Notes under the pieces: generated by a model | The model's database searches: none | Told to the model about the DNA's origin: nothing | The model's input: only the letters and a program-made list of their open reading frames with translations | Program-made: the position numbers and the translations under genes | Shown here: positions 26,603 through 31,874 of the stretch, piece by piece | How positions within the stretch are numbered: position 1 is the stretch's first letter | Layout of the letters: every line of letters starts with the position of its first letter | Assembly: GCA_026770705.1 (NCBI GenBank) | Contig: JANJGN010000071.1 | Location: 1,116,001 to 1,180,000 of the forward strand | Source: Isurus oxyrinchus | Lineage: Eukaryota | Direction of reading: 5' to 3' | DNA: 64,000 bases

Positions 26603-27308
26603 GTAAGTCTGAAGATTTAACTTGATTTTAATATAAACATTTGTTTAGGATTAATTGGACAGTTTTTACAAAGGGCCAGCACAGGCACGATGGGCTGAGT
26701 GGCTTCCTCCTGAGCTGTGAGATTTTAAATTCTTTCATCGAATGTGACTGTCACTGGCGTGGCCAATACTAATTGCCCATTCCCTAAATGCCCCTTGAGA
26801 ATGAGGTGGTGAGCTGCCTTCTTGACCCGCTGCAGTCCATGTGGTGTAGGTACACCCACAGTGCTGTTAGAGAGGGAGCTCCAGGATTTTGACCCAGCGA
26901 CAGTGAAGGAACGGTGATATATTTCCAAGTCAGGATGGTGAGTGACTTGGAGGGGAACTTCCAGGTGGTGGTGTTCCCATGTGTCTGCTGCCCTTGTCCT
27001 TCTAGATGGTAGAGGTCGTGGGTTTGGAAGGTGCTGTTGAAGGAGCCTTGCTGAGTTGCTGCAGTGCATCTTGTATATGTTACACACACTGCTGCCACTG
27101 TGTGTTCGTTGTGGAGGGAGTGAATGTTTAATGTGGTGGATGGGGTGTAGATCAATCGAGCTGCTTTGTCCTGGATGGTGTCGAGATTCTAGATTCTGTG
27201 CTTTGTGCAGAAGTGATTTAAAGAGACAGTCCAGTCGTGGGCTCTGTGTCTGTGCTGCACTGACTCTTTGCTATGTGATAACCACAGTGTGATATTGTGT
27301 TATTGCAG

Positions 27309-27390
27309 GAGAAAGACAGCGATGGAGGAGAGAGTTTCAGGGACCAGTGACATTGCATTGACCCCTAGTTCACTCTCTGTGAAGCACCAG
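27309..27390 (+). CDS. Gene B cytoplasmic linker exon, copy 1
   Basis: RKTAMEERVSGTSDIALTPSSLSVKHQ; phase 2/0, fits the TM exon and the terminal exon. Confidence 0.8.
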
Positions 27391-27989
27391 GTACAGGAGC
27401 TGTTTACACTCACTCCAAAGCTTCAATCTCAGTGTGTAGACAACACATGTCCCAGATTCCCTGCCCAGTTACCCACTGATTTGTACCTGTGGAGTCAGCA
27501 ATGGTTCAGTATCATGCTGTCTCTCTGTTATGACACAGCAACTGGTAAAGGCTGTTGTTTGAAAACCCAGAGGGAAACTTTAAACAACTGTCATAACCTA
27601 TATTTCCCAGTGGAATGTTTGAGATGCATCTCTAAATTCAGGAATAAGACCACCAGTTCTGGAGATGGGTTTATATCAAACTAAATGAGACATATATTAA
27701 TTTACACAAGTTAAACATATGCACATGGTTACAAACTAGTATTATCATAACTTTTTAACAAATTCTCAAACTAATCTCCTCTAAGACAACCCATAGTCTT
27801 TAAGCAGATTCCAGGCATTTTCACCTCACAAATTCCAGTTTCTCTCTCTATCTCAACCTCCCTTTCTTTCTCTCTCTTTCTCTCTCTCTCATCCTCTCTC
27901 TGATTACAAGGTTCATGTTAATGAGCTTCACACCAGAAACTTGAGTGAAGAATCCAAGCCGTCACTCACCAGAGCCATTACCGAGGGAG

Positions 27990-28335
27990 TGCGAGACTGA
28001 CAGCGGGTCAGTACTGAGGGAGTGCTGCACAGTCGGAGGGTCAGTACTGAGGGAGTGCTGCACTGTTGGAGGGTCAGTACTGAGGGAGAGTTGCACCGTC
28101 GGAGGGTCAGTACTGAGGAAGCGCTGTACTGTCGGAGGGTCAGTACTGAGGGAGCGCTGCACCATCGGAGGGTCAGTACTGAGGGAGCGCTGCACTGTCA
28201 GAGGGTCAGTACTGAGGTTTTTGCTGCGCTGTCGGAGGGTCAGTACTGAGGGAGTGCGAGACTGACAGAGGGTCACTATTGAGGATGTGCTGCACTGTTG
28301 GAGGGTCAGTCCTGAGGGAGCACTGCACTGCCATA
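27990..28335. repeat. 33-bp minisatellite (shorter paralogous array at 31145-31315)
   Basis: gggtcagtactgagggagtgctgcactgtcgga units. Confidence 0.9.
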
Positions 28336-28475
28336 GGTGGTTTCTTTCATAAGACATGGGAGAGAGAGTTAAACCCACTGAGACACGACTGACATTAACG
28401 AAGCTGCACAATAATTTAACCCTATCAGTGCTAGTAAATGATGTGAGGATGTCTTCTGTTTCCATTTCTCTGTAG

Positions 28476-28724
28476 GGTAAACAGAACGTGCTGATTACTG
28501 AGCCCCGGAACACAACCAGAGACACAACTAGCGAGGGGGAGACCCCAGCTCCCCGGGGTCTCTCTGAAGGTGCAGTGGGAGGCGATGCTGGACTTGGGAA
28601 CCCCGGCAAACCTGAAGAGTTTCTCTACGCCAATCCCCAAGTTTTGAGGGTGTCCAGTGGTGATGGGTCTGTCCACAGGGAAGAGGAGACGGAATACGCA
28701 CAGATCAGGTTTGAGCATAACTGA
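28476..28724 (+). CDS. Gene B terminal cytoplasmic exon, copy 1 (degenerate ITIM FLYANP; ITSM TEYAQI)
   Basis: Acceptor tttctctgtag|, phase 0; ends RFEHN*; AATAAA at 29241. Confidence 0.8.
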   Translation, partial: GKQNVLITEPRNTTRDTTSEGETPAPRGLSEGAVGGDAGLGNPGKPEEFLYANPQVLRVSSGDGSVHREEETEYAQIRFEHN

Positions 28725-29863
28725 ATGAGAAATGGGGACTGGGAGTGAGGAGGAGTGGGCGTGGGGGTAGGGATTGAGATTCCTGGGAACAGGAAACAAC
28801 CCACTGGGGGAGAGGGGGAGAGAGGGAGGAAGGGATGGAATTGGGCTACGGTTGGTGTGGTTTGGAATGAAATGCTTCTCCAGAGAGGACTGGATGCTGA
28901 GCCATTGGGGAGTGAGATTCACTGTCTCTCTCTCTCTTCCTCTCTGTCTCACTCTTTCTTTCTGTGTCAGTCTCTCATTCTCTCTCTCTTGCTCCTCCTT
29001 TAAGATGACCGTTAATGACTGACTTTGATGACTCAGCTGTTGGTCTCCTGTCCCTAATATCTCCTCATGTGCCTCAGAGTCAGGTGAAATGTGACTAACA
29101 ATCCCCGGATGAGCCTTGGGACATTTTGCTGCATTGAAGGTGCTATATAAATGCAAGTTGTTGCAGTAACTCTGATCTGCTTCTATTAACAATGGAACCA
29201 CAGAGGTTCCTTCGACAGGGCGTGTGTGCAGCAGGGTCACAATAAATACATTGAGCTGTGAGATTTTTCATTCTTACATCGAATGTGGCTGTCACTGGTG
29301 ATGTCCGCATTGATGCCAATCTCTAACTGCCCTTGAGAAGGTGGTGGTGAGCTGCCTTCTTGACCCGCTACAGTGCATGTGGTGTAGGTACACCCACAGT
29401 GCTGTTAGAGAGGGAATTCCAGGATTTTGACCCAGCGACAGTGAAGGAACGGTGATATATTTCCAAGTCAGGATGGTGAGTGACTTGGAGGGGAACTTCC
29501 AGGTGGTGGTGTTCCCATGTGTCTGCTGTCCTTGTCCTTCTAGATGGTAGAGGTCGCGTATTTGGAAGGTGCTGTTGAAGGAGCCTTGCTGAGTTGCTGC
29601 AGTGCATCTTGTAGATGGTACACACACTGCTTCCATGGTGTGTTCATGGTGGAGGGAGTGAATGTTTAATGTGGTGGATGTGGTATGGATCAATCGGGCT
29701 GCTTTGTCCTGGATGGTGTCGAGCGTCTTGATTCTGTGCTTTGTGCAGAGGTGATTTAAAGAGAGAGTCCAGTCATTGGTGTAAGGTTACAGTGGGCTCT
29801 GTGTCTGTGCTGCACTGACTCTCTGCTATATGATAACCACAGTGTGATATTTTGTGATTGCAG

Positions 29864-29945
29864 GAGAAAGACAGCGATGGAGGAGAGAGTTTCAGGGACC
29901 AGTGACATTGCATTGACCCCCAGTCCACTCTCTGTGAAACACCAG
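29864..29945 (+). CDS. Gene B cytoplasmic linker exon, copy 2
   Basis: RKTAMEERVSGTSDIALTPSPLSVKHQ; phase 2/0. Confidence 0.8.
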
Positions 29946-31434
29946 GTACAGGAGCTGTTTACACTCACTCCAAAGCTTCAATCTCAGTGTGTAGACATCA
30001 TATGTCCCAGATTCCCAGCCCAGTTACCCACTGATTTGTACCTGTGGAGTCAGCAATGGTTCAGTATCATGCTGTCTCTCTGTTATGACACAGCAACTGG
30101 TAAAGGCTGTTGTTTAAAATCCCAGAGGGAAACTTTAAACAACTGTCGTAACCTATATTTCCCAGTGAAATGTTTGAGATGCAGCTCTAAATTCAGGAAT
30201 AAGACCACCAGTTCTCAAGATGATTTTATATCAATCTAAATGAGACATTTATTAATTTTCACAAGTTAAACATATGCACATGGCTACAAACTAGTATTAT
30301 CATAACTTTATAACAAATTCTCAAACTAATCTCCTCCAAGACAACCCATAGACTTTAAGCAGACACCAGGCAAAGCATTTTCACCTCACAAATTCCAAAT
30401 GAGGCTCCTTTCACTTTGGTTCCTTTGCAGACAAGTGTAGGATTACAGCTGCTTTGCTGTTACAAGCCTCTGCTCTGCACACACAAAACTGCACAAGTTA
30501 TACCCAGCTCTTGAGTGTGAAGAAGATGGAGATTGATGGGCTCTTGATTGGTAAAGGGATCAATGGTTAGGAGAGAAGGTGGGAGAATGGGGTTTGTGAA
30601 ACATATCAGCCATGTATGAATGGTGGAGCAGACTCGATGGACCGAATGGTCTAATTTCTCCTCCTATGTCTTATGGTCTTATGGCTTCTGTTTGAAGGTA
30701 AATTCGCAATGTATCATCAGGACCTTTGAACTCCATCTCTTCCAATCCCCTTTCATCGTATCAATTTTATTAGTAATATAAACGTTGATTGGTTTAAGAT
30801 TTCAATCTCAGACTTTGAATGTTTTATTTAAAAATACAAATTACCACTTTACCTCTTTGTTTACATCTCAAAACTACTATACATCAAAGCACACAGACTG
30901 GCTGTCTTTAATCCAATTTAAATACACACAGACACACACACAGACTAAACCTCTGTTTAAAAAGACAGTTTGCATTTATAATACAAACATTAATAGATTA
31001 ATAACACTCTGTCTCTATCCCTCCTCTATCTCTCTCTCTCATCCTCTCTCTGATTACAAGGTTCATGTTATTGAGCCTCACACCAGGCACCTGAGTGCAG
31101 AATCCAAGCCGTCACTCACCAGAGCCATTACCGGGGGAGTGGGGGACTGACAGCGGGTCAGTACTGAAGGAGTGCTGCAGTGTCGGAGGGTCAGTACTGA
31201 GGGAGTGCTGCACTGACAGAGGGTCAGTACTGAGGGAGCGCTGTATTGTCGGAGGGTCAGCACTGAGGGAGTGCTGCACTGTTGGAGGGTCAGTACTGAG
31301 GGAGTGCTGCACTGCCATAGGTGGTGCCTTTTATCCGATAGGAGAGAGAGAATTAAACAAGTCTGCACAATAATTTAACCCTATCAGTACCAGTAAATGA
31401 TGTGAGGATGTCTTCTGTTTCCATTTCTCTGTAG

Positions 31435-31683
31435 GATGAACAGAACGTGCTGATTACTGAGCCCCGGAACACAACCAGAGACACAACTAGTGAGGGGGAG
31501 ACCCCAGCTCCCCGGGATCTCTCTGAAGGTCCAGTGGGAGGCGATGTTGGACATGGGAACTCAGACAAACCTCACGAGCTTCTCTACGCCAACATCAACT
31601 TTTCAAAGCTGCCCGGCGGTGACAGGACTGTGCACAGGAGCGAGGACACGGAATACGCACAGATCAGGTTCCAGAAAAACTGA
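31435..31683 (+). CDS. Gene B terminal cytoplasmic exon, copy 2 (ITIM LLYANI; ITSM TEYAQI)
   Basis: DEQNVLITEP...ELLYANINFSK...DTEYAQIRFQKN*; resembles CD33-related/MAG tails. Confidence 0.85.
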   Translation, partial: DEQNVLITEPRNTTRDTTSEGETPAPRDLSEGPVGGDVGHGNSDKPHELLYANINFSKLPGGDRTVHRSEDTEYAQIRFQKN

Positions 31684-31874
31684 GTGTGAAACAGGGAGCG
31701 GGGCTGTGGGGTGTGTGCAGCCAACATGGCCAAATAGTAATGAACACAAATATGATGTTGCTCAACTTTTTTTTATTAGTTCTGAGTGAGCTTTCTGAAT
31801 GCTGCACCTTTTTCCATGCTGTAAAAGATTGTGAGAAGCTTATGAATTATGTATAATGTTACATCTGTTAATAC

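What the first reader, a model, noticed from the sequence alone, without database searches (positions are those of the whole stretch)
26710..31690. Duplicated cytoplasmic cassette gives two alternative signalling tails from one TM exon
A block downstream of the single TM exon is tandemly duplicated (~26710-28730 and ~29252-31690). Both copies are open and phase-correct. They are near-identical N-terminally but diverge around the tyrosines: proximal FLYANP (ITIM broken) plus TEYAQI; distal LLYANI plus TEYAQI. AATAAA at 29241 could end the proximal form. Predicted result: ITSM-only versus ITIM+ITSM isoforms, analogous to but mechanistically different from L-/S-MAG. With two V exons this allows combinatorial isoforms.
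Basis: partly seen in the sequence, partly recalled or inferred. Interest (0 to 1): 0.78.

Follow-up and report, generated by a model that had tools for sequence, protein, structure and literature searches.

The report
Shark Siglec gene with doubled tail
A shark immune-receptor gene of the Siglec type carries its two signalling-tail exons twice in a row, and in the closest annotated relative the first pair is usually spliced in front of the second or skipped, so it probably does not act as a separate end of the gene.

Summary
Downstream of one TM exon (26506-26602), a two-exon cytoplasmic cassette occurs twice. The copies are A1 27309-27390 with B1 28476-28724, and A2 29864-29945 with B2 31435-31683. 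All splice sites and frames are intact. The motifs are as reported: FLYANP plus TEYAQI, then LLYANI plus TEYAQI.

The copies are 92-95% identical in introns and 77% in the last third of exon B, so this is not a haplotype artefact.

It makes A1 plus B1 a 315-nt in-frame internal cassette.

The closest annotated relative is the great white shark gene XP_041037215-221, with six RefSeq isoforms:
- Three join the cassettes in series (four tyrosines).
- Two use only the distal tail.
- One gets a proximal-only tail by skipping A2, which shifts the frame.
- None ends in the spacer carrying AATAAA 29241.

RNA-like contigs from related sharks show TM-to-A and A-to-B joins, but they cannot be assigned to this locus.

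So alternative tails are plausible, but by cassette inclusion or skipping, not by alternative 3' ends. This scan already found the same layout at three other loci of this genome.

The parts
26506..26602 (+). Single transmembrane exon (97 nt), donor AAA|GTAAGT, leaves phase 2
   Evidence: Sequence. tblastn of great white P0031 residues 555-587 hits only 26505-26603. X2 contig record 18 covers 26506-26603 exactly.
26711..28732 (+). Copy 1 of the duplicated block (intron part, A1, intron, B1)
   Evidence: Self-BLAST and global alignment.
27309..27390 (+). Exon A1, juxtamembrane, 82 nt, phase 2 in and phase 0 out
   Evidence: It matches the A segments of the shark proteins.
28476..28724 (+). Exon B1 with FLYANP and TEYAQI; own stop TGA at 28722-28724
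   Evidence: A profile search finds only shark Siglec-like tails.
28709..28710 (+). GT of an internal donor (CAG|GTTTGA). Exon part 28476-28708 is 233 nt and leaves phase 2, so A1 plus this part is 315 nt, in frame.
   Evidence: The same join ('...TEYAQIR|RKTAMEER...') is seen in P0014, P0031, P0029, P0030, P0028, P0001, P0015 and P0035.
28733..29251 (+). Spacer not repeated after copy 2; AATAAA at 29241-29246
   Evidence: X1 record 5 (29143-29298) runs across the AATAAA and the copy boundary.
29252..31691 (+). Copy 2 of the duplicated block
29864..29945 (+). Exon A2, 82 nt, 3 differences from A1
30398..31013 (+). 616 nt present only in copy 2 (intron)
   Evidence: X2 records 21 and 22 lie inside it.
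31435..31683 (+). Exon B2 with LLYANI (fits ITIM) and TEYAQI (fits ITSM); stop TGA
   Evidence: 90% identical to the distal tail of P0031.
31684..31900 (+). Start of the 3' untranslated region after B2. It is shared with paralogues in the window (about 81% to 3356-3508 and 59666-59831).
   Evidence: X2 records 23 (31501-31746) and 24 (31779-31900) lie here.
27979..28330 (.). 33-bp tandem array in the A1-B1 intron (10.6 units). Its counterpart in copy 2 is at 31155-31314 (4.8 units).

Best explanation
This is a real, retained doubling of the two cytoplasmic exons of a CD33-like inhibitory Siglec gene in a lamniform shark.

The distal pair (A2, B2) is the ancestral tail. It carries an ITIM (LLYANI), an ITSM (TEYAQI) and the family's usual 3' UTR.

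The proximal pair (A1, B1) carries the lamniform-specific YANP variant plus an ITSM. Codon 78 of exon B reads AG|GTTT, which is a GT donor in phase 2. That is the same phase as the TM exon's donor. A1 plus B1(1-233) is therefore a 315-nt in-frame module.

The expected mRNAs all end in B2's 3' UTR:
(i) TM-A1-B1-A2-B2, one long tail with four tyrosine motifs.
(ii) TM-A2-B2 or TM-A1-B2, the canonical two-motif inhibitory tail.
(iii) TM-A1-B1 joined directly to B2 out of frame. This stops after six codons and leaves only FLYANP plus TEYAQI.

Shown here: the DNA anatomy, the frames, and the same products annotated in a relative.
Inferred: that this locus in this species makes these forms, their proportions, and the SH2 partners (SHP-1/2 at the ITIM, SAP-type adaptors at the ITSM, perhaps Grb2 at YxN).
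For: -
- The B1+B2 profile hits 11 proteins in 1.84 billion. The 10 whose names I looked up are all shark Siglec-like proteins.
- The great white gene XP_041037215-221 has six isoforms. X1, X2 and X6 carry FLYANP-TEYAQI, then R|RKTAMEE, then LLYANI-TEYTQI in series. X4 is TM-A2-B2. X5 is TM-A1-B2. X3 ends TEYAQI-SVNRTC.
- VNRTC is the start of exon B read one base out of frame, with an exact pattern hit at 28477-28491.
- 8 of the 43 proteins fetched have two motif pairs, and the first pair is always the +3 = P type.
- B1's motif part differs from the great white's at 1 of 31 residues, against 10 of 47 in the linker (p = 0.04). This argues for constraint on B1.
- By a hand count against CAG|GTAAGT on the letters printed, the internal donor matches 6 of 9 positions. 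The A-exon donors also match 6 of 9.
- Contigs of runs X1 and X2 show TM-to-A and A-to-B joins. An X1 contig bridges the spacer/copy-2 boundary.
Against: - No read or contig shown displays the 28708->29864 join. Only the best-supported rows were printed: 200 joints and 695 loose ends were not shown.
- The runs are from relatives, with roughly 3 other letters per 100 in the listed pieces. The family has many near-identical tails, so contigs cannot be assigned to this locus. One X2 loose end before 26506 shows an Ig3-type exon joined to a TM exon. That is either a paralogue or exon skipping.
- The great white isoforms are automatic models, and I could not see their evidence.
- Orthology is not established. 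V2, C2 and TM match other great white proteins better.
- GTTTGA is not a strong donor.
Confidence: 0.6

Rival explanations
1. There are two mutually exclusive terminal cassettes. The proximal form ends at B1's own stop and is polyadenylated after AATAAA 29241, giving an ITSM-only tail. The distal form skips to A2-B2.
For: - B1 keeps its own stop, and the only AATAAA after it lies 517 nt downstream.
- The spacer is not repeated after B2. That would fit B1 having brought its own 3' flank, for example by fusion of two neighbouring genes.
- Contigs lie on B1's distal part: X1 record 3 and X4 record 31.
Against: - 0 of the 6 great white isoforms end there.
- X1 record 5 runs through the AATAAA into copy 2.
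- The bins over the spacer are far lower than those over B2's UTR: X1 about 400-530 against 20,700-27,400, and X2 0-11 against 960-2,000. The tool itself warns that contig depth is a poor measure.
- The four codons after the internal donor read FEHN, against FKRN or FKQN in single P-type tails. That is a hint of relaxed constraint, but on too few sites to weigh.
Confidence: 0.12
2. The proximal cassette is a little-used or decaying duplicate. The working protein is TM-A2-B2 or TM-A1-B2. Models that include B1 are annotation or splicing noise.
For: - In X2, the B1-specific contig has depth 177. The B2-specific contig has 819 and the TM exon 1361 (weak measure).
- FLYANP fits no ITIM consensus.
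- At another locus of this genome, an earlier follow-up found the first copy broken by a stop (s1-865411).
- The B1 linker changes fast (10 of 47 residues).
Against: - Both proximal exons are open with intact sites.
- 30 of 31 motif-part residues equal the great white's first copy.
- The YANP type is the sole tail of many lamniform genes, so it is not a dead motif.
- 4 of the 6 great white isoforms include B1.
Confidence: 0.23
3. The duplication is an assembly artefact, with two haplotypes laid in tandem.
For: None found.
Against: - The copies differ by 5-8% in introns and 23% at the end of exon B. Copy 2 has a 616-nt indel, and the copies have different 33-bp array lengths.
- The two B exons belong to different tail lineages.
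- The same order, FLYANP tail then YANI tail, is in great white proteins from three contigs.
- An X1 contig from another sample bridges 29251/29252 with 109 and 47 letters on either side.
Confidence: 0.02

Closest known systems
Great white shark RefSeq gene 'myelin-associated glycoprotein-like', isoforms X1-X6 (XP_041037215 to XP_041037221; P0031, P0014, P0026, P0032, P0027, P0029)
   Same: It has the same exon order: Ig4, Ig5, TM, A, B (FLYANP...TEYAQI), A, B (LLYANI...TEY.QI). Ig5 is 97% and the distal tail 90% identical to the window's translation. The first-copy motif part is 30/31 identical.
   Different: V2, C2 and TM match other great white genes better, so strict orthology is not shown. 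Its B2 begins RKQ, while the window's begins DEQ. These are automatic models, and I could not inspect their transcript support.
CD33-related Siglecs of mammals (for example CD33, Siglec-7, Siglec-9), recalled from general knowledge
   Same: Both have a V-set domain with the sialic-acid arginine, C2-set domains, one TM, and a tail with a membrane-proximal ITIM and a distal ITIM-like or ITSM motif. The review PMC13358205 (passages read) describes this inhibitory architecture and SHP-1/2 recruitment.
   Different: Mammalian members carry one such motif pair. Here the pair of tail exons is doubled, and the first copy has a YANP variant. Clade membership was not tested by a tree.
L-MAG / S-MAG (Siglec-4) alternative tails, recalled
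   Same: One gene gives different cytoplasmic tails by splicing.
   Different: MAG uses a small stop-bearing exon that is included or skipped. Here a duplicated, in-frame two-exon module is included, skipped or partly skipped. No ITIM or ITSM is involved in MAG.
CEACAM1-L/-S and PECAM-1 cytoplasmic exon splicing, recalled
   Same: Inclusion or skipping of a cytoplasmic exon changes the frame or the number of ITIM/ITSM motifs. The A2-skipping form here works likewise by frameshift.
   Different: Those exons are not recent duplicates of one another.
CD22 (Siglec-2) multi-tyrosine tail, recalled
   Same: It is an inhibitory Siglec with several ITIM-type tyrosines in series, like the four-tyrosine in-series form.
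   Different: CD22's tail is not a visible recent tandem copy of a two-exon cassette. It also has seven Ig domains.

Membership tests
Siglec (sialic-acid-binding Ig-like lectin) family | N-terminal V-set Ig domain followed by C2-set Ig domains, one TM, and a cytoplasmic tail | tested here: met
   Pfam gives V-set 1.4e-11 and Ig_CD22 2.1e-09 on 14629-15099, C2-set_2 2.9e-09 on 15781-16206, and Ig_3 on three further exons. The TM exon is at 26506-26602.
Siglec (sialic-acid-binding Ig-like lectin) family | Conserved arginine of the V-set domain that binds sialic acid | tested here: inconclusive
   The translation of 14629-15099 has ...GPYYFRIEF..., as do the shark proteins named Siglec by NCBI. 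That this R is the ligand arginine is recalled, not modelled here.
CD33-related Siglec subgroup | Groups with CD33-related Siglecs and not with MAG, CD22, Siglec-1 or Siglec-15 in a tree | not tested
   NCBI's names for the relatives are mixed: CD33-like, Siglec-8/10/11/12/13, MAG-like, hemicentin-like. No tree with mammalian Siglecs was made.
ITIM | (I/V/L/S)-x-Y-x-x-(I/V/L), consensus recalled | tested here: met
   B2 reads L-L-Y-A-N-I. B1 reads F-L-Y-A-N-P and fails at -2 and +3, so for B1 the feature is not met.
ITSM | T-x-Y-x-x-(V/I), consensus recalled | tested here: met
   T-E-Y-A-Q-I is present in both B1 and B2.
ITIM / ITSM signalling | Tyrosine phosphorylation and binding of SHP-1/SHP-2 or SAP-type adaptors | not testable with these tools
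   This needs phosphopeptide pull-downs or cell assays.
Alternative-tail receptor genes (L-/S-MAG type) | Two or more mature mRNAs from one gene that differ in the cytoplasmic tail | tested here: inconclusive
   Six isoforms with four tail types are annotated for the great white counterpart. For the window's own locus, only contigs from related sharks exist and they cannot be assigned.

The most novel reading that the evidence does not exclude
Lamniform sharks have turned the Siglec inhibitory tail into a plug-in module. A 315-nt in-frame copy of the tail carries a lineage-specific YANP motif that keeps YxN but loses the ITIM fit. It can be added in front of the canonical ITIM/ITSM tail, left out, or used alone through a frameshifting skip. 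One gene would then yield graded or qualitatively different signalling: four tyrosines, two tyrosines, or a non-ITIM pair. The layout has spread through the gene family: at least four loci in this genome according to the scan's notes, several great white contigs, and the basking shark.
Probability: 0.3. Interest if true: 0.6.

Novelty: new variant of a known kind. Interest (0 to 1): 0.4.

Why it matters
Inhibitory Siglecs set thresholds for immune cells, and their tails are normally a fixed ITIM plus ITSM pair. Suppose sharks really splice a duplicated tail module in, out or alone. That would be a simple genetic way to tune the number and kind of docking tyrosines from a single gene. It would also be a visible intermediate on the road to multi-ITIM tails such as CD22's.

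It also shows that CD33-like tails with ITIM plus ITSM are old: they occur in six shark genera here. The practical value is modest. The layout is already recorded by automatic annotation in two related sharks, and this scan has met it at three other loci. I found no paper on it in four searches.

Tried and rejected
1. A 97-codon open frame runs on from exon A into the intron in both copies (27391-27681 and 29946-30236). I rejected it as coding. The copies differ by 9 residue-changing and 2 silent codons, and other frames of the same introns have open runs of 82-122 codons. Pfam finds nothing.

2. Searching the 82-residue B1 exon for short proteins from transcript assemblies found no candidate. 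The length window hides longer kin, so this says little.

I did not try it again.

4. Antisense open frames at 26787-27188, 29295-29786 and 28434-29267 have no Pfam family. The first two lie in a high-copy repeat, where the DNA run X18's bins are hundreds of times deeper than at unique parts.

5. I did not use contig depth to rank B1 against B2 as main evidence. The tool warns against it, and paralogues are laid on this stretch.

6. I considered a clean tandem duplication of a 2541-nt unit and rejected it as the whole story, because the spacer is not repeated after copy 2. A fusion of two neighbouring genes by deletion, or a later replacement, remains open.

7. Cao and Crocker 2011 (PMC3015071) is not held. 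What I say of mammalian CD33-related Siglecs, MAG, CEACAM1, PECAM-1 and CD22 is recalled, apart from the passages of PMC13358205. PMC8455134 (one passage read) only lists Siglecs among immune families. No supplementary file was opened.

8. I built and searched no joined spliced model. Exons were searched one by one, and full-length comparisons used database proteins.

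
Full report
THE GENE

The window is vertebrate DNA. On the + strand it holds an Ig-superfamily receptor gene. Stop-to-stop frames and Pfam give:
- a V-set exon at about 14650-15055 (V-set 1.4e-11, Ig_CD22 2.1e-09);
- a C2-set exon at about 15800-16140;
- Ig exons at about 21860-22160, 24000-24300 and 25300-25640.

The TM exon is 26506-26602. It enters in phase 1 and ends ...GTGAGAAA|GTAAGT, leaving phase 2. In one search I set the exon's start one base late.

THE OBSERVATION

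Self-BLAST pairs 26711-27837 with 29252-30397 (91.8%) and 27865-28732 with 31014-31691 (82-90%). A global alignment gives 94.2% and 95.2% identity over the two long intron blocks, 93.5% over 28404-28633 and only 76.7% over 28646-28731.

Copy 2 holds 616 extra bases (30398-31013). Both A-B introns carry a 33-bp array, with 10.6 units in copy 1 and 4.8 in copy 2.

The 519-nt spacer 28733-29251 has no counterpart after copy 2. The stretch after B2's stop instead resembles the 3' ends of two other Siglec-like genes in the window (about 81% to 3356-3508 and 59666-59831). So the block is real, old and not a clean tandem repeat.

Exons:
- A1 27309-27390 and A2 29864-29945 are 82 nt each with 3 differences. 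They read KRKTAMEERVSGTSDIALTPS(S/P)LSVKHQ once the split codon is completed.
- B1 28476-28724 and B2 31435-31683 are 249 nt each with 38 differences. Among codons that differ, 24 change the residue and 5 do not.
- All acceptors are AG, and the A-exon donors are CAG|GTACAG.
- The peptides are 71% identical. They are almost the same for the first 27 residues and diverge around the first tyrosine: EEFLYANPQVLRVSSGDGSVHREEETEYAQIRFEHN against HELLYANINFSKLPGGDRTVHRSEDTEYAQIRFQKN.

Codon 78 of exon B is AGG followed by TTT. In B1...ATCAG|GTTTGA is thus a GT donor after 28708, in phase 2. That is the phase in which the TM exon ends and in which both A exons begin.

A1 (82 nt) plus B1 up to 28708 (233 nt) is 315 nt, or 105 codons. 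The proximal pair can therefore sit as an in-frame internal module. Counted by hand against CAG|GTAAGT on the letters printed, this donor matches 6 of 9 positions. The A-exon donors, which the gene must use, also match 6 of 9.

RELATIVES

A profile of B1 and B2 searched against 1.84 billion representative proteins found 11 hits at E <= 0.001. I looked up the names of 10. All are shark proteins that NCBI or EukProt hold, mostly named Siglec or CD33-like. They come from Cetorhinus, Carcharodon, Stegostoma, Rhincodon, Hemiscyllium, Scyliorhinus and Mustelus.

The best hit matched twice within one protein. A second search used the tail of a database protein, P0003 residues 420-534. It gave 17 proteins among 93 candidates.

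The closest counterpart for the tail is a great white shark gene with six RefSeq isoforms:
- X1 (801 aa), X2 (794 aa) and X6 (671 aa) read TM, A, B with FLYANP...TEYAQIR, then directly RKTAMEER... (a second A), then a second B with LLYANISF...TEYTQIRFQKN. This is exactly the join predicted by the internal donor.
- X4 (696 aa) is TM-A2-B2.
- X5 (696 aa) is TM-A1-B2.
- X3 (697 aa) ends ...TEYAQISVNRTC.

A degenerate pattern for VNRTC hits the start of exon B exactly, one base out of frame (28477-28491). X3 is therefore the internal donor joined straight to the B2 acceptor, with A2 skipped and a frameshift stop. In the window the same join (28708 to 31435) would also stop after six codons.

In summary, 3 of 6 isoforms use the cassettes in series, 2 of 6 use the distal tail only, 1 of 6 uses the proximal motifs only, and 0 of 6 end at B1's own stop or in the spacer.

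TWO TAIL LINEAGES

Of the 43 proteins fetched, 35 showed at least one motif pair under my pattern.
- Nineteen carry a first motif with P at +3 (YANP or YASP). All 19 are from Carcharodon, Cetorhinus or entries whose names the tools withheld.
- 0 of 6 proteins from non-lamniform sharks have it. They have Y-x-x-I.
- So the YANI/ITIM form is the older one. The YANP form is a derived lamniform lineage that is the only tail of many genes, so it is not simply a broken copy.
- Eight of the 43 proteins have two pairs: P0001, P0014, P0015, P0028-P0031 and P0035. In all eight the first pair is the P type.

The window's B1 motif part differs from the great white's first copy at 1 of 31 residues, but from its own B2 at 13 of 31. 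Its linker is as close to the B2 copies (9 of 47 differences) as to the great white's B1 (10 of 47).

I draw three readings from this. The doubling predates the split of these species. The motif part of B1 is under constraint (1/31 against 10/47, p = 0.04). And the 5' part of the block has probably been homogenised by gene conversion, which is inference.

Orthology proper is not shown. V2, C2 and TM match other great white proteins better.

RNA

One search found runs, and one laying on 26400-31900 used X1, X2, X4 and X18. All four are Logan contigs. From the pieces listed, they differ from the window by roughly 3 letters per 100, so they come from related sharks and not from this species.

What the contigs show:
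- Loose ends show the TM exon joined to the start of an A exon. These lie behind 26603 in X1 (2 records) and X2 (1), before 27309 in X2 and before 29864 in X1.
- One X1 contig joins 27390 to 28477 with one letter replaced.
- Four records (X1 2, X2 2), laid on A2, run on into GTAAACAG..., which is the window's B1-type start.
- Contigs lie on B1's distal part (X1 record 3 at 28573-28680, X4 record 31).
- Contigs lie on B2's distal part and UTR (X2 records 23 and 24).
- Contigs lie in the spacer (X1 records 4 and 5, X4 record 32, X18 record 11).
- X1 record 5 (29143-29298) bridges the spacer/copy-2 boundary and runs through AATAAA 29241. The layout therefore exists in another sample.

What the contigs do not show:
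- No printed row shows 28708->29864. However, 200 joints and 695 loose ends were not printed.
- Paralogues are clearly laid on this stretch. One example is the X2 loose end before 26506, which ends an Ig3-type exon.
- None of these joins can be assigned to this locus.
- Bins over the spacer are far lower than over B2's UTR, but the tool warns that contig depth is a poor measure.

The RNA evidence says tails of this kind are spliced as predicted in related sharks. It does not decide between series and alternative use here.

MECHANISM

My best reading (confidence 0.6) is an in-frame plug-in tail module, with B2 as the constant last exon.
- Including the cassette gives four tyrosines: a YxN/YANP site, an ITSM, an ITIM and a second ITSM.
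- Skipping it gives the canonical ITIM plus ITSM.
- Skipping A2 alone gives the P-type pair only.

Docking of SHP-1/2, SAP-type adaptors or Grb2 is inferred from motif consensus (recalled) and untested.

A little-used proximal copy keeps about 0.23. An assembly artefact keeps about 0.02.

NOVELTY

Four literature searches and passages of two papers gave nothing on shark Siglec tails. The layout is recorded only in automatic annotation.

The scan's own notes list the same layout at three other loci of this genome (s1-865407, s1-865411, s1-871180), with the same in-series reading. I saw these notes after reaching that reading.

Noticed in passing
window 20648-20932: A second Ig3-type exon, 93.7% identical to P0031 residues 270-364, lies 1.2 kb upstream of the Ig3 exon at 21866-22180 and abuts a run of N (20938-21085). 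The gene may carry this Ig exon twice.
   Followed up: no
window 26506 (X2 loose end): Two X2 records join the end of an Ig3-type exon (...EGFITITVE) directly to the TM exon. This is the layout of paralogues such as P0001 and P0025, or it is skipping of Ig4 and Ig5. It shows that paralogue transcripts are laid on this stretch.
   Followed up: partly
window 29945 -> 31062 (X1): One X1 contig (depth 156, shorter side 27) joins the end of exon A2 to a point inside the repeat-rich intron just before the 33-bp array. This may be a cryptic exon. It would meet a stop within about 30 codons.
   Followed up: no
window 27391-27681 and 29946-30236: The reading frame of exon A stays open for 97 codons into the intron in both copies. 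Substitution pattern (9 changing, 2 silent) and equally long open runs in other frames make it chance.
   Followed up: yes
window 31712-31881 versus 3356-3508 (+) and 59666-59831 (-): The start of B2's 3' UTR is about 81% identical to stretches at the 3' ends of two other Siglec-like genes in the window, including the activating-type gene noted by the scan. The family shares a 3' UTR that the spacer after B1 lacks.
   Followed up: partly
window 31435-31440; relatives' B2 starts: The first residues of the distal B exon vary between relatives. They are DEQ in the window and RKQ in the great white, and an X1 contig has another letter at the first base. Nearly all other tails start GKQ.
   Followed up: no
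window 32779-33420: A reverse-transcriptase fragment (RVT_1, 1.5e-09) lies just downstream of the gene. The first 550 nt or so of each copy of the duplicated block is a very high-copy repeat, judged from the DNA run X18's bins.
   Followed up: partly
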